63,784 bases of DNA from Octopus bimaculoides. Lineage: Eukaryota. This document shows positions 10,701 to 60,155 of the stretch, in pieces. Location of the stretch: NCBI RefSeq assembly GCF_001194135.2, contig NC_068989.1, positions 40,610,992-40,674,775 on the forward strand, written 5' to 3'. Position 1 is the first letter of the stretch, and the number at the start of each line of letters is the position of its first letter. Below the pieces are notes generated by a model. The model was given only the letters and a program-made list of their open reading frames with translations, had not been told where the DNA came from and made no database searches. The position numbers and the translations under genes were made by a program.

Positions 10701-12489
10701 AGCGAAATAGCTTATTGTATCATCAATATTACACACGTTTTTCACATCGCATACTTAAGCAGCAAACTGCTTTTCAACAATATTATAAATAAAAAAACTT
10801 GTCCGTTCTATTGTTTCGGTTACTTTCCACTGTCTCAATTCTGTAGATAATAACTAAATCAAGCAAATATTATTTGTGATGTCACTTGACCTGCAACAAA
10901 TCCCAGGCTAATTTCCTTCTCTTAAATCACATTTTCCTCTCTTAAAAGACGAACGAACTTCGATAATGTAATCTTAGATATATACGCTGTTTGAGAAACT
11001 GAACTTTAGTGACTGAGGGATATTTTATATTAAGTTTCATTGATATAAATGATTTGAAATACTAGCCATCATCAATAGTCTGAGAAATGGAGATTTTGTA
11101 CGTATTTATACTTCAATATGACGCGGTTTATGACATTTCAAAAGGAATTCCACTAAGTTTGTTGACAGTTTTCTTGTTTTACTTACTTGAAACGGTTATT
11201 AATATTTCAACGTTCACTTACTCCAGGAATAGTCTTAGACCTGATGAAATAGTTGGATAAAAATATCTGATTTTCATATTTAGCGAATATATCTTAAATA
11301 CATTTCAAATAGTGCAGCCTGAATAAATATTTGTTTTCAATATCTTAGTTTTAACGAATTAAAATAATACTGTTACTGTACACGATTCATTGTCTTAGAT
11401 ACAAATCTAATCAAGAAAGGCAATGGCGACAAACTCGAAATTTAAGGTAATTAGAACTTCTTAAAAATAGAATCGAATAGAAAGTGGAGTTTTATTTTTG
11501 ACAGTATTCTGACAACTCCAGACATGTTTCCATGCTACTAAATTTCATCACTGAAAATCTGTCTAGCAGTTAATGACAGACTTTAGAAAACAACGGGATA
11601 TTCTTTTAAATAAATTCCATCTATATATTTTCTCTTTTGAAAGCCAGTGTATTTGCAATACTTAGTATTCAAGTATTATAGCACTACTTTCTTTTTTTCA
11701 CAATACGTTTCCTTAAAGTTTAACATCATTTTAAGATATAATGCGATATAGTACTTAATATTCAAGTAAAAGAATGGATTCTAAATGAAATATAGAAAGA
11801 TATAAAATATAGCCACTAAAAAAAAAACACCTTAGAAGACAATACTTATGAAATAATAACATAGCGTCTCCTTTAAAAATATAGGCAGTTGATAATATTC
11901 AATTTAACCATTTCCATTTAATTTTTCATTTTGCTGAAACTCAAAAGTGTAAAAAGAAATGATGTTTATATATTCATCTATTACATGGTATAGATGTAAA
12001 ATATTATATATGAAAGCTGTTTTATATAAGTATGTTGTAATTATCAAATTTCAGCTTAGATTGGATAAATCATTATTGCCTTTATCATTAAGTAAAGTGC
12101 AACAGTATTATTTTCTCAAACCATACATTGAGGAAATAAAACATCAGAGACATAAAATTATTTTCTTCTATAATTATTACACATACTTTGGAAGGTTTCT
12201 TATTAGAGTTGCAAACTGCCCCTGCAGAAAAAAAAATGGTATTGCAATTATATTTTGTCTCTTTAATGTATTCCCTTGAATATTAAACTCAGTCAATATA
12301 GAAAGCGTTATGAAATATGATACAGAAATTGTAATATAATTTGACTCTTCTTGGTGTTTGGATGCGTATAAAAATTCCGTAAATATATATGAAAGATGGT
12401 ATTAGGTCGACATATAGAGAATATTTTCTAGCAAATAAATTATCCTATTTCGATAACTTTCTGCTGTTTTACGCCAGTTGTCAGTGGTG

Positions 12490-14749: not shown

Positions 14750-16810
14750 TACTCCGTGTCGGTCACCGGAGTGATATTTGATCACTTTATAGAGTGTTTG
14801 AGTGTTGGTTTGGTGTCTGAAATGAGATAGCTTATCTCATGGGCAGGTAGAAGCTCTTTAACCTTGGTTGGTAATCTATCTAGGAGAGGGAAATCTCCGA
14901 AATAAAAACCTGAGGTCTTGGAAGTTCCTGGTTTTGTCAATTTCCATGTCACACCGGCGAAAGTCTTCTTTGGCCAATAGGTGGAGGTAGTGTAGTGGAA
15001 GCTACATCCACTGAAAATTGTTCATCTGCACAGGTACTTCTTGTACTCCAAATCTTGGTAAAATCATTGAATTGGTTGATTGGCAGAAACCAAAAAATGC
15101 AGTTGTAACTTACTATACAATGTCTCAAACAGATTCAGTAAATGGCAGAAAAAGCTTGGGAACGTCAGGGGAACAGGTCTGGCACAGCAAGTGTCCCAAT
15201 GTATCACAGGCTTGACCCGGTCGTCATCCTGGCACTGTGGACAAACAATCTTCAAGAAAACGTAAAAATAAACATCCTTTGAATTTTGGTTGTTGGAATG
15301 TGCGCACACTTCTTGATGATAATTTCAACAAGAGGCCAGAAAGACGTACTGCACTTAATACGTGTGAGATTAAGAAATATTCCCTTGACATAGTTGCGTT
15401 CTCTGAAACTCGTCTCTCTGGTGAGAGTCAAATAAATGAACTTACATATGGATACACTATCTTTTGGAGAGTCCTATCTAAGGGTCAGCGTAGAGAATCT
15501 GGTGTTGGGTTTGCTCTCAAGAATACATTAGTCTCTTCCTTTGCAGAATTTCGAAGTGGGATATCTCAGCGGATCACGTCATGCCCTATTAAACTGACAA
15601 AAGTTAGGTTTCTTACCGTTGTCAGTATTTATGCATCAATCATGTCCCATTCTGATGAAACTGTAGAACAGTTTTATGATGATCTAGCACAATTATTGAG
15701 GAAAGTACCAATTTCTGACAAGCTGGTCATATTGGAAGATTTCAATGTAAGAGCTGGAAAGGATTGTTTCATGGCCTGTTTTAGGTCGACATGAGATTGG
15801 AAAATGCAATAAAAATGCAGTAGCTCTTTTGACGTTTTGTACTGAGAATAATCTGGTCACCAACACCAAGCAGAAAAGTAAATATAAAACCACCTGGATG
15901 CACCCAAGATCTAAGCACTGGCATCTCATTGATTATATCGTTATCAGAAAACGTGATATAAAAGACGCTTCTAGCGTTCGGGCCATGAGAGGGGCAGAGA
16001 GCTGGAGTGACCATCATCTAGTGCGTACAAAATTAGATTTTTCGATAATGCCTAAAAATCGACAGTCTGGTCTTAAGGCAACCACCTCAAACAAAGCTGC
16101 AGGCATCACATCAAATAAAGCTATGATTTTCAGGAAACAGTTGAGGTGGTGTAGCCATATTGTTCGAATGACAGATGAACGCATGCCGAAACTGCTGTTT
16201 TATGGTGTGCTTACACAGGGGAAACGATATCAGCGTAAACCTAAAAAAAGGTTTAAGGATGGCATAAAGACTACTATGAAGTCATTGAGAATGGTTCCAG
16301 AAGATATAGAAACCCTTGATTCGGATCGAGTTGGATGGAGAACATAGGTGCGGAGTAGAGTGAAAGCATTTGAAGTGGCCAGGAAAACACAAATAAGACT
16401 CAAAAGAAATCTAAGGAAGAATGTAACGATGGAGAAGGTGAATGAAAATGACCTTTTTGTGTGCACAGTCTGTGACAGACAATGCCTGTCTTTTGCTGGC
16501 CTCAAATCTCATTTGCGAACGCACGGAAAACGAACCTCCACTAACTATTCTGCCTATATGCCTGTGCACACATTTGAGTGCAGTGTATGCCAAAAGGTTT
16601 GCAAATCCAACGGAGGCCTCGAGACATTTTAAGATCCACAAAGAGCAGAACTTATCTGCAGCTCTTGGTGGTCCAAATCGGAGGTGCAAACTATGTGGGT
16701 GTCTTTTCAGAACATTGCCTGGTTTAAAAAGCCACATCAGATGCCATGATTGTGCTAAGGTGTAGGTGCAGGAGGTGGTCAAACTCTGCAAAAGTAGTAG
16801 ATAACCACCA
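14750..16810 (+). mobile_element. RTE-clade LINE, internally deleted (APE endonuclease and C-terminal C2H2 fingers, RT absent)
   Basis: 15237-16060 encodes APE motifs (GCWNVRTL, DIVAFSETR, VSIYA, ILEDFNVR, HWHLIDYI, SDHHLV). It is joined directly to the post-RT QLRWCSHIVRM..MPKLLFYGVL..KRFKD, then C2H2 fingers (CTVCDRQC..LKSHLRTH; CSVCQKVC; CKLCGCLF..HIRCH) and a short gtagtag tail. The 5' boundary is approximate. Confidence 0.9.
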
Positions 16811-16811
16811 C

Positions 16812-18020
16812 CATAACACGCTCACCCGGTTTACAATGTCATCCTTCGCGTCCGCATACAGATCGCAAGCAAAACAAACAGGGGGGAGGGAGAACCATAT
16901 CTACATCATGTGTGCTTACATTTCTTTTCTGTTTTGTTGTTGGAGGGGAATGGGTAGGTTTGGTGTCTGCATGGGGAGGGTGTGGTAAAAAGGGAGAGGG
17001 TGGGCACTGGGTGAGTTGGGGTTGACAAGTACTTTCCTTCTTTCTTTTTCTTTCTCCTCCCGGCTGTTTCCCATTCCCTATCTTTTAATACTGGAGTTTC
17101 TCCTTCTACTTGTACTTCTTGTATCCTTTATTGTGGTGGTGGCTGTCGCTCTTCTACCATTTTAGGTGGTGGAGGGCAGTTCGTTCTTATGTGGCCTTTC
17201 TGGTCACATTTAAGCAGCCAGGAATCCTGCCCTCCACCCACACTTTCAGGCTCAAATCACCGATCCACAGGTTTTCCGCTAATCCTTCGAACGTCTCCAT
17301 ACTAGCCTGCATAGTTATTTCAATAATTTTTCCTTTCCATGCTGTACCATCTGTCACTTCAGCTTGTAAAACCGTGATTTCCTTCTCCTTTTCTATGAGA
17401 AGGGCCGCCACAACCCAAGCCTCATCAATTTCTGGTGGAACCCCTTCAACTTTTATTTTTGCTATCCTCTTACCCATATAGGACGGTAAGAAGGCTGTCT
17501 TATCAGTTTTTAATATTTTGACTGCATTGGCTACCGCTTTATCTACCGTTCTATAATGCACAATTGCAGTTCCATATTTACTTCCTCTCCTCAGATAGAT
17601 GATATCGGGCCAGACCACCGCCAGTGCCTTATCAATCTCACTTTCGTCCACATGATCCACTCTCCCTTTCTCTACGGAGTATACTTTGTATACTACCGTC
17701 TTCCTTTGCATCACCCTTACTGCCATTTTACAGTCCTCTTTTAGGTTTATTAAATTCACTGACCTTTTCCTTAGTTCTGCTGCTTCTGCAAAGCTTCTTC
17801 TTTTTAAATTTTCGTCCATCCTTTTGATAGCTCTGACCAGTTTCTCCTCTGAAGAGGACAATTCTGTTTCACTGGGGTCCGAACATACGCGACTTCCACT
17901 CACCATCTCTCAGTATTACCGAGAGACGGCACAACAACTAAAAAAAACCGCTGCAAACGCAGTACAAGCAAATACAAAATATAGTCAAACAAACAAGCTC
18001 GAACAACTCACAGAGACGGG
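16812..18020 (-). mobile_element. ORF1-only retroelement copy B (subfamily II), 3' end lost at the RTE junction
   Basis: ORF 17906-17187 contains RRGSKYGTAIV, FLPSYMGKRIAKIKVEGVPPEI and WVEGRIPGC, continuing after a 1-nt frameshift as KCDQKGHIRTNCP. The 5' end abuts cggtat (18021-18026, minus). Confidence 0.85.
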
Positions 18021-18026
18021 ATACCG

Positions 18027-19724
18027 ATTTCTTTATTACCCAAAAAGGGATATACAAAGAATTTTTAAGACATCACAAAACATAAATTCGGTACAAAATG
18101 CAACAAACATAAAATCGGGGAACTAAAAATTACAAAAGCGAATGATAATAGAAGAAAAATTAAAATAAAATGATAATATGCAAGAATGAAAAAAATGAGG
18201 CGCAATGTTCACTCGATCCCCGAAGTCGGATGGTTACATTTATCAAGCTTTTCACTTTTACGTTCAACGTCATGTAAACGTTTTAACGGTTTCGTAACTC
18301 AAAAAATTCAAACACTCGGGTTACCTTTCTCCCATTAAACATTGTTACTTCCGTCCTTATCAACTGCAAATAATCAGTTCTAGGGGGTGGTGTCTCCACC
18401 AACCAAACCCTTATCGTTGTTATATTTTCACCAAGTTCTTTTATGTACTACCAGAAGTTTTCCTCGTGTATCAAAATGCATTTCTCAGCACATTTCTCCG
18501 GCATCTTCACTATTATTATTTCCTCCAACTTCGCGACTTTTCTCTCCATCTCCTCACTCTTCTCGTACTTTATCAAAACCCCCTTGTATTTCACATCTTT
18601 ATCCGTTCTCTCCTCCTCTTCTTGTACATTATTAGTTTCTGGCTTTTCTGTCTCTTTTTTTGTTTTCTGTTGACCGTTCCTTTGACTTATTTTTCCTTCG
18701 CTTTTTAGGGTTTCCGTTTTCGTTCTTCTCCTTTGTTTTCTCTGTTTCACACTTCTGTCTCACTTTCATTTCGTCAGTGTGGTCTACAATGTTTTCCTCC
18801 TCTGCTTGTGCTTTCTCTTGCTGTAGCTGTGTAAACTCATATAGAGGGCATTTGGTCTTCATATGACCTCTCTCCCCGCATATGTAACAATTTGGTTTCC
18901 TTCCCTCGACTACAACATTTAACGTTCTCTCGTCTTCCAATTCTATCTGGTAGGGAATTCTTTCTATGTCCTTGAATGTGGCAAAAAGCCACATTTCGAG
19001 TCCAAATCCCCACCAGTTGCGCACTTTTGTTTCTGCCACTGGTCCCAATTCCGGATCCTCCTTGGTTGCAGCCAGTACTGTTGCAACCAACTACTCCGGT
19101 TTAATTTCTGGTGGCACTCTCGGAATACGTATTCTCACAATTCTTCTTCCTCTATAACTTGGTAGCAATCCTATTTTTGTATTTCTTAACATGTTGGTCG
19201 CATGTTTGGTTGCCTCTTCTATGGTGGCAAACCCACCTCAACCATACCGAAGTTTCTTCCTCTGCGGATGTACATGGCTTCATTTACAATTTCACCCAGG
19301 CACTTTTCAATTTCCTCTTCCGTCACCATTTCAATTTTACTGGTCCCGACAGCCTGTGTACGATACACAGCTGTTCTCAGAATTTTGTCTTCCTTTGTCT
19401 CTTTTTCGGGCGGACGGGGACAATTTGTATGAGTCACCCTATACTTCTATCAAATTCCTGCTTCTGCTCACCTCCTCCATATCTAGCTTGATCAACTTGG
19501 TTTCCAGCGGCACTGGCTTCTTCACCGCAGTGACCCTGGCGTAGCTCTCCATACTGGAGACACTACCACTCGCCACAGCTTGGAAAAAAAACGCAGCGGC
19601 TCGCATGAAACGTAACAACAATAATTGCACAAAAATCACAATTATTTACAGAGACAACTTTCAGTAATTCACACAGTTTTGACAAAGTAACACAACAGTA
19701 TTCACAATAATTCACAGAGATGGG
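18027..19724 (-). mobile_element. ORF1-only retroelement copy A (subfamily I)
   Basis: Broken ORF of about 19578-18283 contains RRGRNFGMVEVG, LLPSYRGRRIVRIRIPRVPPEI and VEGRKPNCYICGERGHMKTKCP. Ends ...gggtaataaagaaat. Bounded by cggtat at 19725-19730 and 18021-18026. Confidence 0.9.
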
Positions 19725-19778
19725 ATACCGCTAAGCATTTCGCCCGGCATGCTAACATTTCTGCTAGCTCGCCGCCTT
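19725..19778 (-). mobile_element. SINE 5' head interrupted at CGGTAT by copy A
   Basis: Minus strand: aaggcggcgagctagcagaaatgttagcatgccgggcgaaatgcttagcggtat. Confidence 0.9.
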
Positions 19779-21728
19779 GTATATATTATCATACTAACAC
19801 GCATTATATCCGCACATTTCTTGTTTCGGTTTCTCACTACCAATTCAACTCACAGTTCTTTCATAGGCCCAGGTTTATAATAGTTGGGATTTGCCCGTTG
19901 TATGTATGGGTGTATTTAAAGATGAATATTTATTGAAGCGTTTTTTTTTAAAGAAAGATTTTGAATAACAAATGAGCATACTCGACTGTTCTACTCAAAT
20001 ACGAAAGAGGCTTAACGTTTTGCCTATCTGACATACGTGCTCCTTTTAACATACTTCTGCACAACCCCTTTCACCTCATTTGCGTCATCAAAGACATTGA
20101 GACAAACGAACTAAAGCAAACAGGTTCGATCTTTTAACAATTATCTCCAGAGGAAGTGATTTAACCATTATTACGTTGAATTTGTTGTTGATATAATTGT
20201 TTATTCTGAACAACGGATTATGTGCTCATTTACGCACTAGTAGTATTTGAAATAATGAACTCTATCATATCTCTTTCTATTTATTGGGTTAATGTGTCAT
20301 TAAATGGTCGAGCTCATTTTTTAAAATTATCTCTATGTTTAACATTACTTTGAGCTTCCAGGTTCATTTCCAGTTGTAGCTGTTATCAACAGGAGTATGG
20401 CATCCACATTGCTGAATTACAATACATGTAAACGAAATCAAAATATATAATGGTATTATTCTTTCATGTTCTGAGAAATCTTACATTTATCTCATTTACG
20501 AAATTAAAGACAAGGAGTCGGTCTCTATAATGAACCGTTGAAACTTATTTAGCACTCCATCATAATCGACATGAATGTTTTCTACCTACAGTTTTATATA
20601 TTGATCCCTTGAAAGTAAAATAACTGGTACAAATCGATGACACTTCACTCAGAATAATGAAATTCTAACGATCAGTTTGTCTGGAATTTTCTTGGAAATA
20701 CGTTTCCTGAATGTACTAAAACAAGCTGGTAAAATTGATAAAGTATCATTGATGAATAAAGTATTGATTATTTTATAGAGGGCCTAAAGCTTCTAGCTTT
20801 ATGAAATGGGGACAGTTGATTCATCATAAGAACGCCACTTATCGATCTTGGAGAGATGAAAAGTAAGGTTGATCATCACAGGATTTAAAGGCAGATGTAA
20901 AGTAATATAATTAAATACCATAGTAGTTTTTATGACGGAAATTCACACTTTGTATTTGTCACTGCTAGTATCATTAACTTAATTACAATCTGAGCCAATA
21001 ATGAGTGTTTTGACCATAGGTCTGTTGGACACGACTGATCTGGACAACAACAACTCTATGCAGTCATTTGATCTGCAAGAAATAGTAATCATGTTCTCTC
21101 GAATTACATCATAACATCTTAAGATAATTTAGTTCTAGACACACTAACATGACCTCAGTCGTCAAGAGCAGAATGTCTTTGATCATAAATCTGGTTAATG
21201 TAAAAGGTCTGTTTAATGGAAGCTAAACTAGTATTAAATGACAATAACTAGTAAAATTAACCATGTTTTGTAACATTGACACGAGTTCACAGATACTGAA
21301 GAAGAATTCGATCACTCCTAAACAAAATAATTATTCTGAACTTTTGCCAACAGGTCACGAATTTGATAGTTTTGTCAATTGCATTTATTGCAATATCAAA
21401 AAATATATATTGTTTTATTACCTTAACTTAATAAATGTGATAAATGCAGTAATAAATGAGTGGTATTTTCGAATACTTTGAGATTTGAAACTACAATCAA
21501 ACGAGCATAACTATTTAATGCAAAGCAAATTTCCTCTGGAGGAATAGATTTATACATTCGTAAAGTATTACACATCTGAAAAGCAGAAGCCGTAGATATT
21601 TAAATCATCTTCCAGTATATTTCATTTATTTTTCTCTTCATTGAGACAGAAAAAAAAAACAGATGCCACCCTGTAAAATAATATAAGTAAACGCTATAAG
21701 ACTTCCACTCAATCGTTTCTACCAAACC

Positions 21729-22496
21729 GTATAAAACAAAAATTTTCGGTATCTCAAATCGAGTTTGAAGAGAGATAGCGAAGTCTTAAAAAAAAAAATT
21801 TTTTTAAACATGGAACCGAAGAAAGTGGTAAAATGATAGAATCGAACAAGGAAGAAATATGGGAAGTCGCTCAAGGAAGAAAGCAGAGGAAACGGAAGAA
21901 GGAAAGTCGGTGTGAACCCCAACCTATACCCACCCCACCCATACCTTCTCAACCCTAACCTCCCCCTGCAGACACCAAACCCATCTATTCCCCACGGACA
22001 CAAAAAAGAAAAAAAAGCACAAACACACAAAAAAAAACACAATCCTCCCCTCCCAAATTGTTACGCTTGTGTTTTAGTCAAAGGAGATAACATGGAATTG
22101 GTAGAAAATGTAAAAAATGGAAGGACACGAAATCTATAAAGACAAAAGAGAAGGAAAAGGAAAATATAGTACTAAGCATGTTGGTGCTGGAATGTCGGTC
22201 AAGAGAGCTAGACGAGCATAAGGAAGGCGTTAAATACAGAATGTTGTTATGTGACATAAAGGAGGTTTCGAAGAGTATTAAAAAAGAGGAACTGGAAGAG
22301 AAATACGGGATAGACATGAACAGGATGTAAAAGGAAGTAAACGATGCTACTGAGGTGGGGTAGGTGGCACAATTTCATTTATCATTTTCATTCTCATGCA
22401 TATTTATCATAGTTTAAGTTTTTTGTAATTGTTTTATGTTCCCACATGACTTGTATTGTCCTCTCTTTGTGCGTCTGTTTTGGAAATAATAAAACG
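21729..22496 (+). mobile_element. Internally deleted ORF1-only-family copy D (768 bp)
   Basis: Shares tatctcaaatcgagtt near its 5' end with E, the ccccaacc..cagacacc..attccc segment with B and E, and the 3' cccacatg..ttgtattgtcc..aataa end. Flanked by an 18-bp TSD. Confidence 0.8.
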
Positions 22497-22514
22497 AATC
22501 ATTTCTACCAAACC

Positions 22515-23981
22515 ACATACATCAGAAACCTTCTGCATCTCAAATCGAGTTGCTGCGAATTGTCGTATGGAAAACTTTGTGCTGTTTTGTGCTGCTTTGC
22601 ATCGGCTTTTGTGTTTGTGCTGTCTCTCCACATTTGAGGAGGGATGGCTAAGTCTTTAAAAAAATGTTTTATTCAGACCTAAGCGGGTCAGACTTGTCAT
22701 CAGAATTATCGTCATCCGAGGAGGAGCTCGTGCGAGCGGTGGAAGTAATGGACAAGTGCTTGAAGAAAAAGAGTCCCGCAAAGGCGACAGAGATTCCTAA
22801 AAATGAGATAAACCTGAAAAATTTAAGAAATTTCGAAAAATGTTAAATAGGGAAGGTGGGGACGTGAAATTGTCACCACCTCAGGAAGTTATGAGAAATA
22901 TAGAAGAAAAGAAGATACTCCATAAAGGTTATTCAGTAAAAGAAAAAAGAATTGAAAGTGAACCTGCGGAAGTGATAGAAGAGGCATTGAGGCCACTTTG
23001 GCAAGATATAAAATATCTTGCCAGAGGAAGCTGATATGGCACTGTCGATGTATATTTTAAAAACAAGGAAAAGGTGAAGGAGAACTCGGCATACCCATTG
23101 AAATCGGAAAAGGTGATCATCCTAACTACGTACCTTGGATGAAGTTATAATGACGGTCAGTGGAGGGCAGAGTTCCACGCTGCTTTAAATGTAGCCAGAA
23201 GGGCCACATTAGACCGGACCGCTCCTTCACAAACCAAAATAATCAGAGGAGATGAGATTAAACAAGATAAAGGAGCAAAAAGAAGGGAGGCCGAAGAGTT
23301 CTAGAAAGGAAGAAACCAGAAAGGGGGAGGAAATAGCAACAGAGTATAAGTGGGAGAAAGTCACCGTAAGGAGGAGAAAGAAGGCAAGTGATTGGAACTG
23401 TAAACCCCAACCCACACTACCCAGACCCTCTCAGACCCCCTCCCCCAGCAGATACCCATTCCCACCCGACACAAAAAGAGAATGCAAACACACACAAAGA
23501 ATTTCAGACACCCTTCCCGAAGTTAAAAAAAAAGGGAAAAGAAATGCAAAGCTTTCATGCTATATAGATCCAATAACGAATTGATAAATGAGTTTTATTC
23601 ATGGGACGAGGTAAAGAAAGTAGGAACTACTGGATTTGATAACATTGTGGAGTGGCACTGGTGTGTGTTCCCAACAAAGGAGTAAGTGAAGATAATATAT
23701 ACGTCTGAACACGGTTACAGTTATTGGGAATTAGATTATGACTGGGATTTACTACCAAATTACATATGGGACAAGCTATTGGAAGAAATGGGTTTTGATA
23801 TGTTAGAGGGATTAGGTTTTAAAAAGTAGAAAGTGGGACTGTTCGTAAGTGGGGCGAGTGGTTCCATTTCCATTTTTTATTGTCATTCATATTATTATAT
23901 TTTTTTTATTTCATTGTTAGATGTCCCACATGTCTTGTATCGTCCCGTCTATGTGCACCCCTTGTGGGCAATAAAGTTAAA
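22515..23981 (+). mobile_element. ORF1-only retroelement copy E (subfamily II)
   Basis: SELSSSEEELVRAVEVMD aligns to B (TELSSSEEKLVRAIKRMD). Also YLARGS*YGTVDVYF and VEGRVPRCFKCSQKGHIRPD. 3' end ccccttgtgggcaataaag. TSD at 22497-22514 and 23982-23999. Confidence 0.85.
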
Positions 23982-26772
23982 AATCATTTCTACCAAACCA
24001 TTACAACGAATTTGGATAAAACTCAAAGAGTAAATGATGTGGGAAATTAGAACAATTAATGATATCTGTAATGAATGCAGTAAGCTAGCACTAAAGTGTA
24101 TTAGTGCAGGCACGATTCTGTCGGTAAAAAAAGTGCACTGGTATGTTAGCCGAGTGTGCGAATTCAAAGTAGCAGAAAGGTTCTTGATGTAGAATAACAA
24201 TTGTAGGATTTTGTTGGATTTCTCCTCGAATATTAATCATACTATTTTAACAAGAAAAACATTTATTGAGGAGAGGAAACATAAACGTAAAATACCATAA
24301 GAGTGGATACTAAAAAAACAGAACATTGAGTTATCAAAGCCTAACGCGAGAGATTGGCAGATTGTAGAAGCTTACAATGACCAGTTGCTCTGGTGGTAAT
24401 GGACCACAGCCAAATTGATGCTACGTAAGAGACTAAAGGATATTAGCTTGTCGATTACATAGATCAAAGTGCTCAACTAATACTTCTTTCATTGACCCCG
24501 AAAGAACGAGACACAATTGACCTCAGTGGTATTTGAACTCAGAACAAGACTAGCCAGTATTATTCCTACAGACTACTGATTCTATATGGTACATATGTTA
24601 TAGAGAACAAGATGGTAAAAGCCAAAGACAACTCCGCTCGGGATTTGTAGTGTGAATTTATAGAGAACTAAAAACTATGAATCAATTTGCCAGAATTTTT
24701 CCCGATTATTGTAGACTTCTATTAATATTAACATTCAACACAGGTATTGCAATCGTTTTGGTTAAAAAGAAACTGCTATTTCCCTCAGAAAAATCACTTA
24801 AGTATTTGCCAATGTGTTTTGCCTTGTGTATGTACTGAGCTTTCATTGGAGAGTCACAACTTGATACAGAATGATATCAATTATTTCACTTGTTTTTGAC
24901 ATGGATGACGTCTATAAAAGTGAAATGTCTTGTCCAATTATTTCAGCAAAGCAATTATTTATACATCACTTCAGGCATGTCTGTCTTTTTTTCATATGTT
25001 AAACCTACACAGATACACACAACGATAATGTGAAATGAATTTCTACGTGTTCAAACGTTAACACTGGCTGCCAGATTTCATAATGAAATAAGCATTATAA
25101 AACTAGATGTATGAATGATACGAAGTGACAATGCAACAAGAAAAGTGTGAAAATTAGCTTAAATAGAGAATTATTAAATGCAAACACAGACCAGCAGTAT
25201 TTCGTGAACAACAACAAAATTCTAGAAATATTAGATTTTTTTTTTTATATCAATTTTTACATTGCTTAAAATCTTGCAGAAAGAAATCTGGATTCGTTTA
25301 ATTATATGTTGTGGTGTTTAACCCATCCACACACTTATCAATTAATTATTGGACAAGTAAACGAGCCTTCCTTGTCAGTTATGATTATTTATTTATCTTC
25401 CCGTCCAGTGACGTTGGCATTATTATAATGTTCGTTGTTTTCTTCTTACTAAGTTATTTATAAATGTTTCATACACTAAGTGGCCACCAGTCAAAGAGAT
25501 GGGTACGAGTGTCTCCTTTCACTCTCTTTCCTGTAGGGATTAAAATAGATTAGTGAAATTTGTGACGAAGTTTTCGCTTTGAAACTTTCTAATCAATTAT
25601 GGTGCCCATCATTGCAGTTGAAATAAAAGGAAACCTATCATTCAATCAAACTCTCATGTACAACATCCAAACGCTATTTGAAGAGGAAGATGGGGGAGAG
25701 GGCAGTTCTTTCTCCCGGTTCTCAAACGTGAAAGAGAAGGATGTGGGTAGATTAAAGGCGGCTATCTCAGGTAGACCTTGAAATTATTCGAAAATCTGAA
25801 ACGACTGTGATATAGGAGATATAGCACATTTGTCGAAGAGATAAGCTGTCTTTTGCTAAGCACTTTCTCTACAACCTGTTCCTTTAACAAAGCGGCAGTC
25901 CTGGACAATAATTGAGGGACTAGTATTAGGAATATATTTAGTTGATCATAGTGTACCACCACTTGAATAATGTGGCTAGCGGTGGAAATAAGATAAGTTC
26001 GTGAGCCTCAGCAAGGAAAAACTAAGCAAATTAATCCGCAGGACTGTTGGCTCAGGGATTAAGGCCAACTTTCAAACAAACTTGACCTAGATTTGATACC
26101 AGTTAAGGAATTGATTATTCGAGATAAAAACTACTATCACACTGATGCTGCCAGCCGGGTCTGTCAGATACGCACAGAGCAACGGAAATACTCTTTACAT
26201 GAATATAGCTGGCTTGAGAAATAATGTTGAACAGCTGTTGTTTAAAGCTGAACATTTTTATTGTTACTCAAATAAATCGTGAAAATCGCTCTGCTGAGTC
26301 TTTTGATCAGAAAGAGGAGTGGAGTTTTGCTCTGCCTACTGGGTATGTCAAAAGGAGCAGTGTGCTGGGCGTGATAAATAAGACAAGACTGATATTTCTT
26401 CCCTTTAGTCAAATGCTAGTCTATTCTTTTCGTATACCACTTAAAAGCAGTGAAGGGGCAAGTTCTTGCACCCAATTTCTCAAAATTAAGAGACTGACGT
26501 ATGACGTGAATGACAACAGCGTGAGACTGCAAAAAGAAGTCAACAACTGAAAGACGGCAATTACATTTGATAATTAGTGTAGTCCAGGATTTGTTGGATT
26601 ACTTGGTTGGCTCTATAGCTGGATACCACCACCCCTGCTGCTACAACTTCACTCTATTGTATATTTCCTACTCGATTTTCATGTTCGTTGTACGTTTGAT
26701 AATTTATTGTAATTTAATTTTTGTGATACCACTTTATCCTTCATAAAATTATTATTATTAATAGTAGTAGTA

Positions 26773-46340: not shown

Positions 46341-47793
46341 GTCTCTCTACCAGCACGTGCATTACTTCCTCCTGAATGTCTCTAAAAAAACGGGGAAATA
46401 CATCGAAATAACCAAAGATTGAATTGTCTCTGAATGAACTACTATGTAGGATAAAATTAATATATTGCACAAAAGAATTTTCTCCGAAAATTTGAGTTTT
46501 AAATAATGTATTTAAGTTTTCCGACAAACTCTCGTGTTTACAAACTTTTCAAAATATAGTTTTAGCTTCCAGTTACATGGTAGCGTTTGCTTTTTTTATA
46601 TTATTAACGTTGACAATCTTATGTGTGCAATTGTTGTTTAATTAATTATTGGAAGTTAGTAGATAGCGTATTCTTAAAGTAAGCTTAGTTTTAGTTATTT
46701 ACTTGTTCGACATTATTGCGTATGAGATAAATATAACAAGGAATAAACCTGATATCTTTTGTTGTAAACAAATAGACTACATGTTTTTCAGGCATTTTCA
46801 GACGAAGCACAATAATTTCACGAATTGAAAACGGAGATCTTAAATCGTTTTCTTTACGTCTACAGAAGATTTCAAGAAACCAAATCTACAAGCACAAATC
46901 GTAAATCATTGGTGAACATAGATCAAATTGGAACCATAACCTGAAAAGTTATGCTGATATCTTTATTTATTTATTTATTTATTTATTTCCCTTTATTTTT
47001 ATTTTCCCGTCGGAGATACCTATCGGTTTAGGTTCACCTCGCACAATTATTTTCCTCTCACTCACACTCTGATTCTTCTTCTCTCAACTCCCTCTCTCTC
47101 CCTCTCTGTGTCTGCGCGCCCGCATATATTTGTTTCCACACACAGAGTATACATTTAAAAGTATATATCTGTAGACATATTTACGTGCTTGCATATGTAC
47201 GGAAGTACATACATATAGATCTTCCGGGTGAGATTCTTTGTCTATATCTCTCTTCGTATAAGCTTACGTTTGTGTAGATATACACACTCACACACACACA
47301 CAAATTTTTGCATATACAACTCCCAGCTTACCTAAATGTGGGTGTCCCAGTGAAACCTCCAAAAGGAAAGAAGAAACTTTGGAGTAACACCGAAGATGTC
47401 CAATGTAGGCAAAAGAAATATCGGGTATAAAAGGAGATATATACGCAGATTTTACCTGCTAGGTAACTACTGGCATGGAGAAGATGGCACAAACTATCAT
47501 TTTGTACATCAAAAGTGCTGCCAAAATTGCATGGATCTAAATCAGGACTTTTTTCCAGGAGGAGGACAAAGAAGAAGTTGCACTTTGTCTGCTCTTAAAA
47601 GACGATATGCAAGCATACTTCCTGCTACTGCAAACTGCTAATTTCGCCTAAATGTGAAAATAGTAGCAGCAGGACAAAAACATATTTTGTACATATAGTA
47701 GCTGACGTAGCTACGGCAAGCAAAGGCTTGGAACCACGCAAGGCGGCGAGCTGGTAGAAACGTTAGCACGCCGGACGAACTGCTTCGCGGTAT

Positions 47794-49408
47794 AACGGCT
47801 CTGTGAATTATTGTGAATACGGTTGTGTTATTTGGGAAAACTGTCTCTTGTGATTTTTGGGGAATTGTTACGGTTACGTTTCACGTGAGCTGCTGCATTT
47901 TTTCCCAGCTATGGCGAATAGTAGTGTCTCCAGTATGGAGAGCTACGCCAAAGCTACTGCGGTGAGGAAGCCAGTGCCGCTAGAAACCAAGTTAATCAAG
48001 TTGGATATGGAGGAGGTGACCAGAAGCAGGAATTTGATAGAAGTTGAGAGAGACTCATACAAATTGTGTCCCCCAAAAGAGACTAAAGTAGAAAAAATTC
48101 TGAGGACAGTTGTGCATCGTACACAGGCTGTCGAAACCTGTAAAATTGAAATGGTGACGGAAGAGGAAATCGAGGAGTGCCTGGGTGAAATTGTCAATGA
48201 AGCCACGTACATCAACAGAGGAAGAAAGTTCGGTACGGTAGAGGTTGGGTTTGCCACCATAGAAGAGACAACCAAACATGCGACCAATATTTTAAGAAAT
48301 ACAAAAATAGGATTACTACCAAGTTATAGAGGAAGAAGAAGTGTGAGAATACGTATTCCGAGAGTGCCACCAGAAATTAAGCCGGAGTAGTTGGTTGCAA
48401 CAGTGCTAGCTTCAACCAAGGAGGAGCCGGAATTGGGACCAGTGGCGAAATCAAAAGTGTGCAAATGGTGGGGATTTGGACTCGAAATGTGGCTTTTTGC
48501 CACATTCGAGGACATAGAAAGAATTCCCTACCAGATAGAAGTGGAGGACGAGAAAACGTTAAATGTAGTAGTCGAGGGAAGAAAATCAAATTGTTATATA
48601 TGCGGGGAGAGAGGTCATATAAAGACCAAATGCCCCCTATATGAGTTGCCACAGCAAGAGAAAGCACAAACAGAGGAGGAAATAATTGTAGACCACACTG
48701 CGGAAATAAAAGAGAGACAGAAGTGTGAAACAGAGAAAACAAAGGAGAAGAACGAAAATGGAGCTACTAACCCTAAAAAGCGAAGGAAAAATAAGTCAAA
48801 GAAACGGTCAACAGAAAACAAAAAAGAGATAAAAAAGCCAGAAACTAATAATGTACAAGAAGAGGAGGAGAGAACGGATAAAGATGTGAAATAGAAGGGG
48901 GTTTTGATAAAGTACGAGAATTGCGAGCAGATGGAGAGATAAGTCGAGAAGTTGCAGGAAGCAATAACAGTGAAAATTCCCGAGAAATGTGCTGAGAAAT
49001 GCATTATGATACAAGAGAGAAACTTCTGGGAGTACATAAAAGAACTTGGGGAAAATTTAATAACGAAACGGGTATGGTTGGTGGAGACACCACCCCCTAG
49101 AACTGATTATTTGCAGTTGTTAAAGACGGACGTAACCATGATTAATGGAAGAAAGGTAACGCGAGTGTTTGAATTTTTTGAGGTACAAAACCGTTAAAAT
49201 GTTTACATGACGTTGAACGTAAAAAAGTGAAAAACTGGATAAATGTAACCACCCGATCGAGTGTTCATTGCGCCTCATTTTTTTTCATTCTTGCATATTA
49301 TCATTTTATTTTAATTACCCCGATTTTATGTTTGCGTTTTGTACGGTCTTTATGTTTTGTGATGTCTTAAAAATTCTTTGTATAGCCCTTTATGGGTAAT
49401 AAAGAAAT
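47794..49408 (+). mobile_element. ORF1-only retroelement copy C (subfamily I, 1615 bp)
   Basis: Single frame 47911-49197 (429 codons, three in-frame stops): SYAKAT, NRGRKFGTVEVGF, LLPSYRGRRSVRIRIPRVPPEI, VEGRKSNCYICGERGHIKTKCP, K/E-rich C-terminal region. TSD cggtat at 47788-47793 and 49409-49414. Confidence 0.92.
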
Positions 49409-49543
49409 CGGTATTCGTCTGCTGTTACGTTCTGAGTTCAAATTCCGCCGAGGTCGACTTTGCTTTTCATCCTTTCGGGGTCGACTTTGCTTTTCATCCT
49501 TCCGGGGTCGATAAATTAAGTACCAGTTACGCACCAGATTTTA

Positions 49544-49660
49544 TGAGGGGTGCTGAAAAGTTGTTGGCTTTGAGTAAAAAGAATCAAATAATTATGATTT
49601 TATTCAACATATTCCCCTCTCAGATTTACACAACTATTGCAGCAGTACTTCAGTTTTATA
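49544..49660 (+). mobile_element. 5' fragment of a mariner-type MITE inside the SINE
   Basis: Near-identical to 50426-50541. TA at both ends. Confidence 0.75.
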
Positions 49661-50425
49661 ATCGACTTAATTCCTTTGTCTGTCCTTGTTTGTCTCCTGT
49701 ACGTTTAGCCCCTTGTGGTCAATGCAGAAATAAGTTGACAGATACAGGGGTGGCCACTACTAACATCCACACAGGCGTCACGCCAATATTTCTAGTAAAC
49801 ATCGGCACCGGATTTATCTACCAGCTGTAGATCAAACTATATGGTATGAATGGTTGAGCAGCGGGTTCTAGGACGTGCATTGTCCTTATAATATAATTGC
49901 ACAAACGTATCAAATGTGAGCAGACACCCTTATCATATCGTTTTATCTAATGCGAACACTATTTGGTGCTTCAAACTTGCTAATGTATTCTGCATAATAC
50001 CATTATTTCGTTTCCCAAAATGGCTCTTTCAAAAATGATGCCGTCTATTTGTTTTTGAGATGTCTATTTAAATGGATTATGGTGGATTGCTGTCTACTTC
50101 AAAACAACATTCTGGTTGAGAAGGATTTATAAAGCATCGAATATTTAAAATATATGCATATGTAGAATGTTATATGTATTTACTTTTATTAACGGATTAT
50201 TATATTGCAAATGTGTTACTTTGTTCTTATTTCAATCTTTCTTGAACATCAATATTTCAGTCACAGCAATATTTATATAATATGGTTCTGAAAACAATGT
50301 ATATGTATTGATAATCAGTTAGAATTATAAGTGGGTTTTTTTTTTTTACATATGCTTCCTAATTATATATTTTTCCCCTATTTCCCTGTTTTAAATAGAT
50401 CATCATTAATAGGATTTCATTTTAA

Positions 50426-55127: not shown

Positions 55128-56990
55128 TGTGGTAGTAGGCAGCCATTATAAATAGACCAGTAGCCGGTCGACAGAAAAAGGTCGAAGGTCAGGAGTACAT
55201 GTAGACTGAATTTATGCTTGTTGAATTGTGATCATGGTTATTGAACTTGTATTTTTCGTTGAACTGTTGAAGATTTTGTGTGGCTTCCCCATTTATGGGT
55301 GAAGCAGAGAATATTGGAAATGTGCAGTCGCAAACTGGAAGCTATGCTGCAGTAACAGGCAGAAACCTATCGGCCGAGCTCTTGCAGATAAGAGATTTGG
55401 AAGTCGGAAATAAAGACTTCTAGAAATTTAACCAACTATTGAAGAAAGAAGGTGATAGCCTGAGGCTAACGCTAGCAAAAGAAACAACAGAGAAGGCAGA
55501 GAGAAAGACAATAACCTACCGTACGTTAAATATAGCTACAAATAAAATAGAAATTGATAATGTCGACGAGATAGAGGAGTGCTGGAAGGATATTAAAGAC
55601 GTAATAACGTTTTTTAATATAGGAAGAAAATACGGCACGGTGGAGGTACGCTTCGTTAATGAAAACGAAGCGAAAAAATACTCCACCGTAGCCTTGAAAT
55701 CATCGATATGGGCACTACTACCGACGTACTGCGGAATGCGCGCAACACGAGTTCGAATCGGTCGGGTGCCACCTGAAATTGAAGAAGACTGTCTGGTGAC
55801 GGCAATTTTATTCAATGCGGAGGAAAATACAGGAATTTTTAAAATTTCAAAGACAACAGAGGTCAACTCGTGGGGTATGGCCTTGGGGTCATACTGCATA
55901 TCACCTTGTCAGACCTCCACAATATTGCAGAGGAGGTGGTTCTACCTGATGAAACCAGGCTGAGGTTAATGGTGGAGGGCAGGCTACCAGTATGTTACGG
56001 TTGCGGTGTAAGGGGGCGCATAAAAGCAAAGTGCCCCCAGAAGCAAGGACAAGTGGCAGAGGATTGTCAGGGGGAGGACAAAAGTACGGTGGTAGTGGAA
56101 AAAGAAATAGCAGCAGCCGAAACCGAGAGAGAAGGAAAGGGTGAGTCACCACCCAAAAGGAAAAGAAAAGCAACACAGGAAAAGAGAAAGAATGAAGTAA
56201 CACCAAGTCAAACGCTAGAACCCGAACCAGAGCCTTCTACAAGCAAAGATGAGGAGAAACAGAAAGAACGACCGAAAAGAAGAACAGAGTCAGGAAATAT
56301 ACCAACAGAAAAATATGACAAAAGAATGGTCGTTTATAAAAGAAACAGAGAGAGAAAAACAGGTAACAAAGATAAAAGGCGTTGTAAGAGTCAGATTGTC
56401 AGACGAAAACACCATAGCAGTGTTGCTGGATGATGGAAAAGCGACAAAGCTGACGGAGAGATTTGGTGAAAGAATTGAATGTACGACGATTAAAGTGAAA
56501 TACGATGAGATGCCAGTTGTAGTGGGTCTTGCGGACGTGGATTTTTTCTGGGATTACTAAAACAAGGTAAAATATAATTTTAATAAATCATGATAAATAC
56601 TGAACAGTTAGAACAGTTAAATGGAACGTTTTGCTTTGGTGGGTGGGAAGCCATTTCATCATCATTAATTAATAATCCATAAATCATTCGTTTATTTTTC
56701 TTTCCCCATGTACGTCTTTTGTATTGTCCCACTGTAAACTCTGTATAAAATGGCTTTATGCCAATAATAAAGAGAATAGTACGTGTAGACTGTTGATACT
56801 CGTGTCTGTGCTGATATAGTAATTATATTGTGTTACTAAGTGGACGTTATAACGATCCCACCTTTTGAGGATAATAACACTGTTACAAGTGGTGGGTCGT
56901 ACAGTGCCAGATAGAACCATTCTATTGATGACTTCTGAATATAAAAACACCTCCCAGAGCGACAACCGTCGTCAAAAGACAGGTACAACA
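55128..56990 (+). mobile_element. Gypsy 5' LTR (~278 bp; 55128-55208 plus 56794-56990) split by copy F
   Basis: Starts TGT and ends ACA, directly followed by a PBS. Removing F and one TSD copy gives a contiguous LTR. Confidence 0.75.
55209..56778 (+). mobile_element. ORF1-only retroelement copy F (subfamily III, 1570 bp)
   Basis: GSYAAVTG, NIGRKYGTVEVRF, LLPTYCGMRATRVRIGRVPPEI, VEGRLPVCYGCGVRGRIKAKCP. Ends aataataaaagagaat. 15-bp TSD agtac(a/g)tgtagactg at 55194-55208 and 56779-56793. Confidence 0.9.
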
Positions 56991-59927: not shown

Positions 59928-60155
59928 AAGAGCTGGTAGAAACGTTAGCACACCGGCGAAATGCTTAGCGGTATTTCGTCTGCCGTTACATTCTGACTTC
60001 AAATTCCGCCGAGGTCAACTTTGCCTTTCATCCTTTCGTGGTCGATAAATAAAGTACCACTTACGCACTGGGGTCGGTGTAATCGACTTAATCACTTTGT
60101 CTGTCCTTGTTTGTCCCCTCTATGTTTAGCCTCTTGTGAGCAATAAAGAAATAAG
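59928..60155 (+). mobile_element. Uninterrupted SINE of the cggtat subfamily (empty target site)
   Basis: gcttagCGGTATttcgtc at 59963-59980. Tail ttgtcccctctatgtttagcctcttgtgagcaataaagaaataag. Flanking taagagct duplication. Confidence 0.9.

What the first reader, a model, noticed from the sequence alone, without database searches (positions are those of the whole stretch)
47740..49414. ORF1-only retroelements found at one exact nucleotide (CGGTAT) of a SINE head
Seen: copy C splits a SINE after gcttcgCGGTAT, and CGGTAT recurs after its 3' end (47788-93, 49409-14) where the SINE resumes. Copy A, 28 kb away on the opposite strand and with unrelated outer flank, starts after gcttagCGGTAT of another SINE head (19725-30). 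An empty site is at 59969-74. The site lies between the SINE's A-box-like and B-box motifs. Known: Tx1-clade LINEs are often sequence-specific and some target other repeats. Inference: a SINE-targeting, Tx1/L1-derived non-autonomous retroelement, i.e. a parasite of a parasite. I do not know of this being described in cephalopods.
Basis: partly seen in the sequence, partly recalled or inferred. Interest (0 to 1): 0.85.

Follow-up and report, generated by a model that had tools for sequence, protein, structure and literature searches.

The report
Octopus gag-only retroelements that target SINEs
Short octopus retroelements that encode only the RNA-binding ORF1 protein insert at one exact nucleotide inside a SINE, apparently by borrowing the enzymes of a site-specific L1/Tx1-type LINE, so this is a real and neat case of a known behaviour aimed at a new target.

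Summary
Copy C (47794-49408) splits a SINE after CGGTAT, and CGGTAT is duplicated at its 3' end. Taking out the insert and one CGGTAT restores a colinear SINE. Copy A starts after the same CGGTAT of another SINE head. Its 3' end is followed by CGGTAT and then a second, distantly related ORF1-only element (X), which is a tandem insertion at one site. A third O. bimaculoides copy (L001) has the same 3' junction, in a SINE of a different subfamily.

Host SINEs differ far more than the inserts do (about 63% against 85% identity), so a composite amplifying as one unit is unlikely.

In O. vulgaris, relatives form head-to-tail arrays that keep a 15-19 bp target duplication at every joint. They sit either at a second site in the SINE head (CAGAAACGTTAGCACGCC) or in a Helitron-like repeat. 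Some arrays end in a 5.2-kb autonomous LINE (ORF1, then APE-RT-zf-RVT; closest solved relative is human L1 ORF2p). That LINE shares its 5' start, its ~45-nt 3' tail and its target with the ORF1-only units.

The ORF has tandem RRM-like folds plus a CCHC knuckle, with dN/dS about 0.2.

Verdict: Tx1-like site-specific retrotransposition by ORF1-only non-autonomous elements. It is a new variant of a known kind.

The parts
47740..47793 (+). 5' part (head) of the type-2 SINE that hosts copy C. It ends in the target hexamer CGGTAT (47788-47793).
   Evidence: aligns to positions 1-45 of the uninterrupted SINE at 59930.
47794..49408 (+). Copy C, an ORF1-only element. It has a ~118-nt 5' UTR and one decayed ORF (47911-49197; stops at 48388 and 48893). 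Its 3' UTR ends ...gggtaataaagaaat.
   Evidence: zf-CCHC; 82-88% identical O. bimaculoides proteins that read through; conserved 3' tail.
49409..49414 (+). Second copy of CGGTAT, the target-site duplication of copy C.
49415..49734 (+). Remainder of C's host SINE (type-2 tail). It carries an internal ~27-bp duplication and about 120 bp of unrelated sequence (about 49535-49658).
19725..19782 (-). SINE head that precedes copy A. It ends in CGGTAT (19725-19730).
18027..19724 (-). Copy A, an ORF1-only element of the same family as C (86-91% identity).
18021..18026 (-). CGGTAT lying between the 3' end of A and the 5' end of X.
16990..18020 (-). Element X, a second ORF1-only family. Its ORF runs 17906-17187 and the CCHC knuckle continues after a frameshift to about 17100. 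It is about 31% identical in protein to the A/C family. Its 5' end (cccgtctctgtga) resembles A's. Its 3' part is lost to a nested LINE fragment; the end coordinate is approximate.
59930..60155 (+). Uninterrupted type-2 SINE with an empty CGGTAT site at 59969-59974. Its 3' tail is homologous to the tails of the ORF1-only elements and of the LINE.
21712..23999 (+). Y1 (21729-22497, internally deleted) and Y2 (22515-23982). These are two X-like ORF1-only units, head to tail. The 17-nt ATC[G/A]TTTCTACCAAACC lies before, between and after them.
55194..56792 (+). Element Z (body 55209-56777), a solitary ORF1-only element. It is flanked by a 15-bp duplication, AGTAC[A/G]TGTAGACTG.

Best explanation
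[quoted passage not shown] The protein has tandem RRM-like folds, one CCHC knuckle and a C-terminal extension. They also kept the 5' start and the ~45-nt 3' tail of a site-specific LINE of the L1/Tx1 group.

Proposed mechanism. Their RNA is packaged by their own ORF1p. The ORF2 protein (APE endonuclease plus reverse transcriptase) of a related autonomous LINE then copies it, recognising the shared 3' tail. The endonuclease nicks the bottom strand of a SINE head just 5' of CGGTAT, and the top strand six bases downstream. Target-primed reverse transcription then places the element there, flanked by a CGGTAT duplication.

The duplication rebuilds the target, so later insertions at the same site stack elements head to tail (A followed by X).

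What is shown: the exact junctions, the duplications, the restorable empty sites, the tandem stacking, the shared termini and target with an autonomous LINE in O. vulgaris, and purifying selection on the ORF.

What is inferred: that ORF2p is supplied in trans, that the endonuclease sets the specificity, and that a CGGTAT-specific autonomous LINE exists in O. bimaculoides.
For: (1) There are four elements at one nucleotide. C has both junctions. A has its 5' junction with the SINE head. X has its 5' junction. L001 has its 3' junction.

(2) Removing the insert and one duplication restores a colinear SINE for C. The same holds for the O. vulgaris cases L006 and L005. L006's host SINE keeps its own 14-bp duplication around the whole structure.

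(3) Hosts differ. C's host has a type-2 tail and L001's a type-1 tail. The host remainders are about 63% identical against 85% for the inserts, and C's host is 89% identical to an empty SINE.

(4) In O. vulgaris L006, two different ORF1-only families sit in tandem in a SINE head, each followed by CAGAAACGT[C/T]A[G/C]CAC(GCCG). In L005, a 5'-truncated type-2 SINE sits at the same site with a ~17-bp duplication.

(5) Five loci on five O. vulgaris chromosomes (L003-L005 and L009 at the CACATGG... site, L010 at a site about 14 nt further on) carry arrays of 1 to 5 or more units at one spot of a Helitron-like repeat. L007 and L008 lie in the same repeat, but their joints were not read. Every inter-unit joint read keeps a copy of a duplication of about 18 nt: CACATGG... 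at the first four loci, CTTCCAGTCT... in L010. In L003, L004, L005 and L009 the arrays run directly into a 5.2-kb LINE that has the same tail and a homologous 5' start.

(6) The LINE's ORF2 has Exo_endo_phos, RVT_1 and zf-RVT domains. Its best solved relative is human L1 ORF2p (E = 8e-65 over residues 4-866). Its ORF1 is 31-40% identical to the ORF1-only proteins.

(7) The ~45-nt 3' tail is conserved among the LINE, all ORF1-only families and the type-2 SINE.

(8) dN/dS is 0.16-0.29 between ORF1-only copies and families.

(9) The predicted fold matches tandem-RRM proteins, and Pfam finds zf-CCHC. This is type I ORF1p as described for Tx1-like elements.

(10) There is a precedent. Tx1-Mar LINEs and SINEU show tandem insertions sandwiching a 16-bp duplication inside a Mariner (PMC4494074). 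L1-Tx1 families are listed as recently active in O. vulgaris (PMC13282606).
Against: Only three O. bimaculoides loci could be examined, and no genome-wide junction census was possible.

No autonomous LINE with the AAAGAAAT tail or CGGTAT specificity was seen. The partner is extrapolated from an O. vulgaris LINE that uses a different target.

The SINE heads of A and C (86% identical over 56 nt) are too short to show independent hosts for that pair.

The two type-2 SINEs in the window share the tail but are not themselves in SINE heads. Tail sharing therefore does not enforce the same site.

X's 3' junction and L001's 5' junction are missing (a nested LINE fragment and an assembly gap). RT phylogeny was not done.
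Confidence: 0.8

Rival explanations
1. Composite element. A SINE head plus the ORF1 body (with or without the SINE remainder) arose once and then amplified or duplicated as a unit. The shared junction would then be inherited, not repeatedly targeted.
For: The SINE heads of A and C are about as diverged (86%) as the inserts (86-91%). In O. vulgaris, the arrays and their Helitron-like host recur together at every sampled locus. This leaves some room for co-mobilisation there.
Against: C's host has a type-2 tail and L001's a type-1 tail, and the host remainders are only about 63% identical against 85% for the inserts. A is followed by X, not by the SINE remainder. L006's host SINE has its own duplication and holds two different families. 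A type-2 SINE uses the same site in L005. Array length and composition differ between loci.
Confidence: 0.05
2. Self-directed targeting. The ORF1-only elements choose the site themselves, through the C-terminal part of their ORF1p or by RNA-target pairing, and borrow only a non-specific ORF2p. This would be analogous to HeT-A Gag guiding telomere targeting.
For: The ORF is under purifying selection, and its C-terminal extension was not found by BLASTP in the LINE's ORF1. Closely related elements use at least five different targets. No CGGTAT-specific autonomous LINE was seen.
Against: Unrelated ORF1 families that share a site share the target: A and X; L006 elements 1 and 2; OvUnit and the LINE. 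In contrast, the X-like ORF1 family is found at three different targets. A protein-less type-2 SINE lands at the same SINE-head site. No RNA-target complementarity is visible at the junctions.
Confidence: 0.1
3. Ectopic gene conversion or recombination between SINE copies spread one original insertion, with its CGGTAT repeats, into other SINEs.
For: It would give the same position and the same flanking hexamer in different SINE copies. SINEs are abundant (11.6% of the O. vulgaris genome).
Against: The homology arms are short (46 nt on the 5' side). The 5' ends differ between copies (aacggc against cccatc), as expected for separate retrotransposition events. Different families are stacked at one site. 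The whole superfamily shows family-specific targets and duplications of 6-19 bp, together with an endonuclease-encoding partner.
Confidence: 0.03

Closest known systems
Tx1-clade site-specific LINEs and the elements they mobilise: Tx1L in the piggyBac-type Tx1D of Xenopus; Tx1-Mar LINEs and SINEU in Mariner-N4_AMi of crocodilians (Kojima 2015, PMC4494074)
   Same: APE-type, L1-like ORF2. Insertion at one exact sequence inside another transposon. A target duplication of similar size (16 bp there, 6-19 bp here). Sequential tandem insertions that sandwich the duplication. Non-autonomous partners that share the tail and the target.
   Different: The target here is a SINE head, at two distinct exact positions, and in O. 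vulgaris also a Helitron-like repeat. The main passengers are protein-coding ORF1-only elements rather than SINEs. Placement in Tx1 by RT phylogeny was not tested.
HAL1 ('half-L1') elements of mammals (named from my own knowledge; the term appears in papers listed)
   Same: Non-autonomous LINE derivatives that keep ORF1 and the termini but lack ORF2, and depend on ORF2p supplied in trans.
   Different: HAL1 derives from mammalian L1, which has a type II ORF1p and a poly(A) tail, and it is not site-specific. The octopus elements have a type I ORF1p (RRM-like folds plus CCHC) and a specific non-poly(A) tail. They are site-specific and split into several old families kept under selection.
HeT-A of Drosophila telomeres (from my own knowledge)
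   Same: Encodes only a Gag-like/ORF1 protein with CCHC knuckles, needs RT in trans, and forms head-to-tail arrays at a defined kind of site.
   Different: HeT-A belongs to the Jockey clade and adds to chromosome ends without endonuclease cleavage or target duplication. The octopus arrays are internal, carry duplications, and lie inside other transposons.
LINE-SINE pairs with a common 3' tail (Kajikawa and Okada 2002, as cited in PMC4494074)
   Same: The type-2 SINE, the ORF1-only elements and the LINE share a ~45-nt 3' tail, including a small CCC...GGG hairpin-like motif.
   Different: Here the tail-sharing SINE is also the landing site for the same group of elements.

Membership tests
L1/Tx1-group non-LTR retrotransposons (autonomous partner) | ORF2 with an N-terminal APE-type endonuclease, an RT, and a C-terminal Cys-rich motif | tested here: met
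   L004:7661-10843 has Exo_endo_phos, RVT_1 and zf-RVT. Human L1 ORF2p is the best solved relative, E = 8e-65 over residues 4-866. This was seen only in O. vulgaris loci, not in the window.
Tx1 clade specifically | RT-domain phylogeny groups it with Tx1 reference elements rather than with L1 proper | not testable with these tools
   No reference Tx1 or L1 RT sequences were available here. The only indirect hint is that RepeatMasker-type annotation lists L1-Tx1 families as active in O. vulgaris (PMC13282606).
Tx1 clade specifically | Sequence-specific insertion into a repeated target with a target duplication, and tandem insertions at one site | tested here: met
   CGGTAT site. CAGAAACG... site. 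Helitron-like host site.
Type I ORF1p (Khazina and Weichenrieder classes, as summarised in PMC5203782) | At least one RRM plus a CCHC zinc knuckle | tested here: met
   zf-CCHC at E = 1.3e-4. The AlphaFold model has two beta-alpha-beta domains with block-mean pLDDT 63-92 (51 in one linker block). These match tandem-RRM proteins (NONO/SFPQ, IMP3 RRM12) at Foldseek E of 1e-5 to 1e-3. Pfam RRM models do not hit, so the RRM call rests on the fold alone.
ORF1-only non-autonomous LINE derivative (HAL1-like) | One ORF homologous to a LINE ORF1, no RT or EN, and termini shared with an autonomous LINE | tested here: met
   The ORFs are 31-40% identical to the LINE ORF1. There are no RT or EN hits. The LINE 5' start was read by eye as resembling that of OvUnit (junctions), and the 3' tail is shared. 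For A and C, the shared tail and 5' motif are with relatives. Their own partner was not seen.
ORF1-only non-autonomous LINE derivative (HAL1-like) | Derived from mammalian L1 (type II ORF1p, poly(A) tail) | tested here: not met
   The ORF1p is type I and the tail is specific, ending AATAAAGAAAT. It works like HAL1 but is not a HAL1 family member.
tRNA-derived SINE (the target) | Head derived from a tRNA, with internal pol III A and B boxes | tested here: inconclusive
   By eye, there is an A-box-like TGG[C/T]AGAA[T/A]CG and a B-box-like GAGTTCAAATTCC. ARAGORN finds no tRNA in the window, and Rfam finds no tRNA match at E <= 10.
tRNA-derived SINE (the target) | Short, dispersed, flanked by its own target duplication, with a LINE-related 3' tail | tested here: met
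   There are at least 10 copies in the window. L006's host SINE has a 14-bp duplication. The type-2 tail is homologous to the LINE tail.
Composite retrotransposon amplifying as a unit (SVA-like) | Head and body co-inherited, with the same host context in all copies | tested here: not met
   Host SINE subfamilies differ and diverge more than the inserts do. A is followed by X, not by the SINE.

The most novel reading that the evidence does not exclude
The ORF1-only elements, rather than the borrowed endonuclease, carry the address. On this reading their ORF1p (through its lineage-specific C-terminal extension) or their RNA directs a generic ORF2p to a chosen sequence. That would explain how close relatives came to use at least five different exact targets. 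A weaker version that is better supported: the SINE-targeting LINE lineage also amplifies the type-2 SINE, and so makes its own landing sites.
Probability: 0.1. Interest if true: 0.85.

Novelty: new variant of a known kind. Interest (0 to 1): 0.6.

Why it matters
Site-specific LINEs are the natural models for programmable RNA-templated insertion of DNA. Here a single animal lineage offers several closely related families with different exact targets: two positions in a SINE head, a Helitron-like repeat, and two further sites. Their duplications range from 6 to 19 bp. An apparently intact autonomous partner is present (its ORF2 is open over the 1061 codons held), alongside many protein-coding passengers still under selection.

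That makes two open questions directly testable by comparison and by domain swaps. How do APE-type endonucleases change specificity? And what does ORF1p contribute when ORF2p comes in trans?

It also bears on octopus genome annotation. SINEs make up about 12% of the O. vulgaris genome. Insertions that split the putative A and B boxes would be expected to silence SINE copies. Fragments of the ORF1 gene have also been absorbed into gene models.

Tried and rejected
(1) A protein search with X's ORF1 found nothing.

(2) Look-ups of the best O. bimaculoides proteins (P0006, P0001) found no contig on record.

(3) A scan of metagenome contigs for the 21-nt 3' junction gave one hit, a bacterial contig. 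This is a chance match.

(4) ARAGORN and Rfam did not recognise the SINE head as a tRNA.

(5) A deep profile search found 889 representative relatives. The eight named ones among the ten I looked up are all from octopods: Octopus vulgaris, O. sinensis, O. bimaculoides and Argonauta hians. None of the seven long representatives I scanned against Pfam carries an RT, so this gave no clade name. Some are chimeric gene models.

(6) Template switching of the U6/L1-chimera kind was rejected as the origin of 'SINE head plus element'. The SINE remainder follows the element, and the empty site can be restored.

(7) Segmental duplication of A and C was rejected, because they lie on opposite strands with unrelated flanks.

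(8) A conserved RNA structure in the 3' tail was looked for. Only a 3-bp hairpin (CCC-UUGU-GGG) is supported, which is too weak to build on.
Full report
**1. What is in the sequence**

The window is octopus DNA. The ORF of the insert finds 82-88% identical Octopus bimaculoides proteins.

At 47740-47793 a SINE head ends in ...gcttcgCGGTAT. A 1615-bp insert follows (47794-49408) and ends ...gggtaataaagaaat. CGGTAT then recurs (49409-14) and the SINE continues. Joining the two flanks minus one CGGTAT gives a sequence colinear with the uninterrupted SINE at 59930-60155, apart from one missing T.

Copy A lies on the other strand (18027-19724). It is 86% identical to C by BLAST and 91% over aligned columns. 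It starts right after ...gcttagCGGTAT of another SINE head.

CGGTAT occurs 13 times in the window. The signal is therefore its position inside the SINE, not the hexamer.

**2.

A's 3' end is also followed by CGGTAT (18021-26). What comes next is not the SINE remainder. It is the 5' end of another element, X, which begins cccgtctctgtga; A begins cccatctctgtga.

X encodes a protein with the same architecture, about 31% identical to the A/C family. So two families sit head to tail around a single CGGTAT.

A third O. bimaculoides copy was fetched through an annotated protein (L001, chromosome CM046624.1). It has the same 3' junction, aaagaaat|CGGTAT|ttcgtccgtc... Its 5' end falls in an assembly gap.

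**3. The element**

The ancestral ORF spans almost the whole element, about 430 aa. Database copies read through the two stops seen in C. Pfam finds one CCHC knuckle and nothing else.

An AlphaFold model built on 22 homologues is confident only in the core (block-mean pLDDT 63-92, 51 in one linker block). That core folds as two beta-alpha-beta domains that match tandem-RRM proteins. RRM plus CCHC is the type I ORF1p described for Tx1-like elements (PMC5203782). There is no RT or endonuclease.

Between copies and families, dN/dS is 0.16-0.29. The protein therefore matters for propagation.

The window holds six such elements:
- A and X, in tandem at CGGTAT.
- C, at CGGTAT.
- Y1 and Y2, a head-to-tail pair with the 17-nt ATC[G/A]TTTCTACCAAACC before, between and after them.
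- Z, solitary, with a 15-bp duplication.

**4. Repeated targeting or a composite that amplified?**

The SINEs in the window and loci fall into at least two subfamilies with different 3' tails. C's host and the empty copy are type 2. L001's host is type 1.

The host remainders of C and L001 are about 63% identical, whereas the inserts are 85% identical. C's host is 89% identical to the empty SINE. The hosts are thus older than the inserts and unrelated to them.

For A against C, the 56-nt heads are too short to decide. But A is followed by X rather than by a SINE remainder.

**5. Relatives in O. vulgaris show this is a general property**

A profile search added O. vulgaris proteins, and ten loci were fetched in all, L001 to L010.

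In L006, one SINE with its own 14-bp duplication holds two different ORF1-only families in tandem. Each is followed by CAGAAACGT[C/T]A[G/C]CAC(GCCG), and the SINE then resumes. This is a second exact site, inside the A-box-like motif, with a 15-19 bp duplication.

In L005, a 5'-truncated type-2 SINE sits at that same site in another SINE head, with a ~17-bp duplication.

Another family, OvUnit (about 1776 bp), forms arrays of 1 to 5 or more units on several chromosomes. Every joint read keeps a variant of an ~18-nt sequence (CACATGGAGGAAATCAAT). The single-unit locus L004 shows it as a plain duplication. A sister family in L010, and the LINE copies in L007 and L008, use a site about 14 nt further on in the same host.

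The host is a ~930-bp repeat. It starts TC..., ends ...CTAG after a GC-rich hairpin, and lies in (TA)n. That looks like a non-autonomous Helitron.

**6. The autonomous partner**

In L003, L004, L005 and L009 the arrays run directly into a ~5.2-kb LINE, after one more copy of the duplication. L007, L008 and L010 hold copies of that LINE too. The LINE's 5' start resembles that of OvUnit (read by eye from the junctions). Its last ~45 nt match the ORF1-only elements and the type-2 SINE.

Its ORF1 is 31-40% identical to the ORF1-only proteins. Its ORF2 has Exo_endo_phos, RVT_1 and zf-RVT. The best solved relative is human L1 ORF2p, at E = 8e-65 over residues 4-866. R2 proteins are far behind.

This places the group in L1/Tx1. 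A 2026 annotation lists 13 recently active L1-Tx1 families in O. vulgaris but says nothing about site specificity (PMC13282606). I could not run an RT phylogeny, so 'Tx1' rests on behaviour and ORF1 type.

**7. Mechanism**

The best reading is target-primed reverse transcription by an ORF2p supplied in trans. The shared 3' tail recruits the enzyme, and the endonuclease sets the site. For the window, the nicks would be 5'-...GCTTAG^CGGTAT^TTCG-3', staggered by six bases.

Because the duplication rebuilds the site, later events stack elements head to tail.

The target follows the co-resident partner, not the ORF1 family. Unrelated ORF1 families at one site share the target, while X-like elements occur at three different targets. 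A protein-less SINE also uses the same site. This favours specificity from the endonuclease over specificity from ORF1p, but it is an inference.

The closest precedent is Kojima (2015). There, Tx1-Mar LINEs and SINEU insert into a Mariner with a 16-bp duplication, and tandem copies sandwich that duplication.

**8. Limits**

Only three O. bimaculoides loci could be read. Further look-ups failed, and a metagenome scan gave a chance bacterial hit.

No CGGTAT-specific autonomous LINE was seen. The tRNA origin of the SINE head is not confirmed by ARAGORN or Rfam.

The deep profile search found 889 representative relatives. The eight named ones among the ten I looked up are all octopod, and none of the seven I scanned against Pfam carries an RT.

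**9. Verdict**

The behaviour is known: site-specific L1/Tx1-type retrotransposition into other repeats, with tandem stacking, by non-autonomous passengers. What is new is threefold. The target is a SINE head, hit at two exact positions. The passengers are ORF1-only elements under selection. And close relatives have switched targets quickly.

I found no description of this in the held literature.

Noticed in passing
window 21712-23999 (+): Two X-like ORF1-only units (Y1 internally deleted, Y2 about 1.47 kb) lie head to tail. The 17-nt ATC[G/A]TTTCTACCAAACC occurs before, between and after them. This is a further exact target of unknown origin.
   Followed up: partly
window 55194-56792 (+): A solitary ORF1-only element (Z) is flanked by the 15-bp duplication AGTAC[A/G]TGTAGACTG. 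Its ORF1 is 43% identical to the O. vulgaris LINE ORF1 over the first RRM-like part.
   Followed up: partly
window 15237-17000 (+): A fragment of an unrelated LINE is nested in element X and removes X's 3' part. It has an APE endonuclease, an internal deletion, and a C-terminal region with C2H2 fingers.
   Followed up: no
L003-L005 and L007-L010; for example L007 1633-2340 plus 11222-11452: The O. vulgaris arrays all sit in one ~930-bp repeat. It starts TCtttatatat..., ends ...gacccggcaacgacgggtctttaatgCTAG, and is flanked by (TA)n. It has 146-bp internal tandem repeats. It looks like a non-autonomous Helitron used as a landing site, much as Tx1D is for Tx1L.
   Followed up: partly
L005 430-800: A 5'-truncated type-2 SINE is inserted in the head of a type-1 SINE at the CAGAAACG site, with a ~17-bp duplication. 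So the SINE that shares the LINE tail is also placed by the site-specific machinery. Yet the two type-2 SINEs in the window are not in SINE heads.
   Followed up: partly
window 49470-49658: C's host SINE carries an internal ~27-bp tandem duplication (gtcgactttgcttttcatcctt) and about 120 bp of unrelated sequence inside its body.
   Followed up: no
proteins P0065, P0081, P0142 (O. bimaculoides v1 gene models): ORF1 fragments of this superfamily are fused in silico to astacin, LDL-receptor class A and C2H2 zinc-finger gene models. These look like annotation chimeras caused by intronic copies.
   Followed up: no
window 18008-18020 and 19712-19724 (-), compared with 59975-59985: The first bases of A and X (cccRtctctgtg) faintly resemble the SINE sequence just 3' of the target (ttcgtctgccg). 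I have no explanation for this.
   Followed up: no
SINE body, for example window 60010-60100: From memory, the SINE body (ctttcatcctttcggggtcgataaattaagtaccag) resembles the CORE/MIR-type central domain. It may correspond to the OR2 CORE-SINE of octopus cited in PMC4758252. This was not tested.
   Followed up: no
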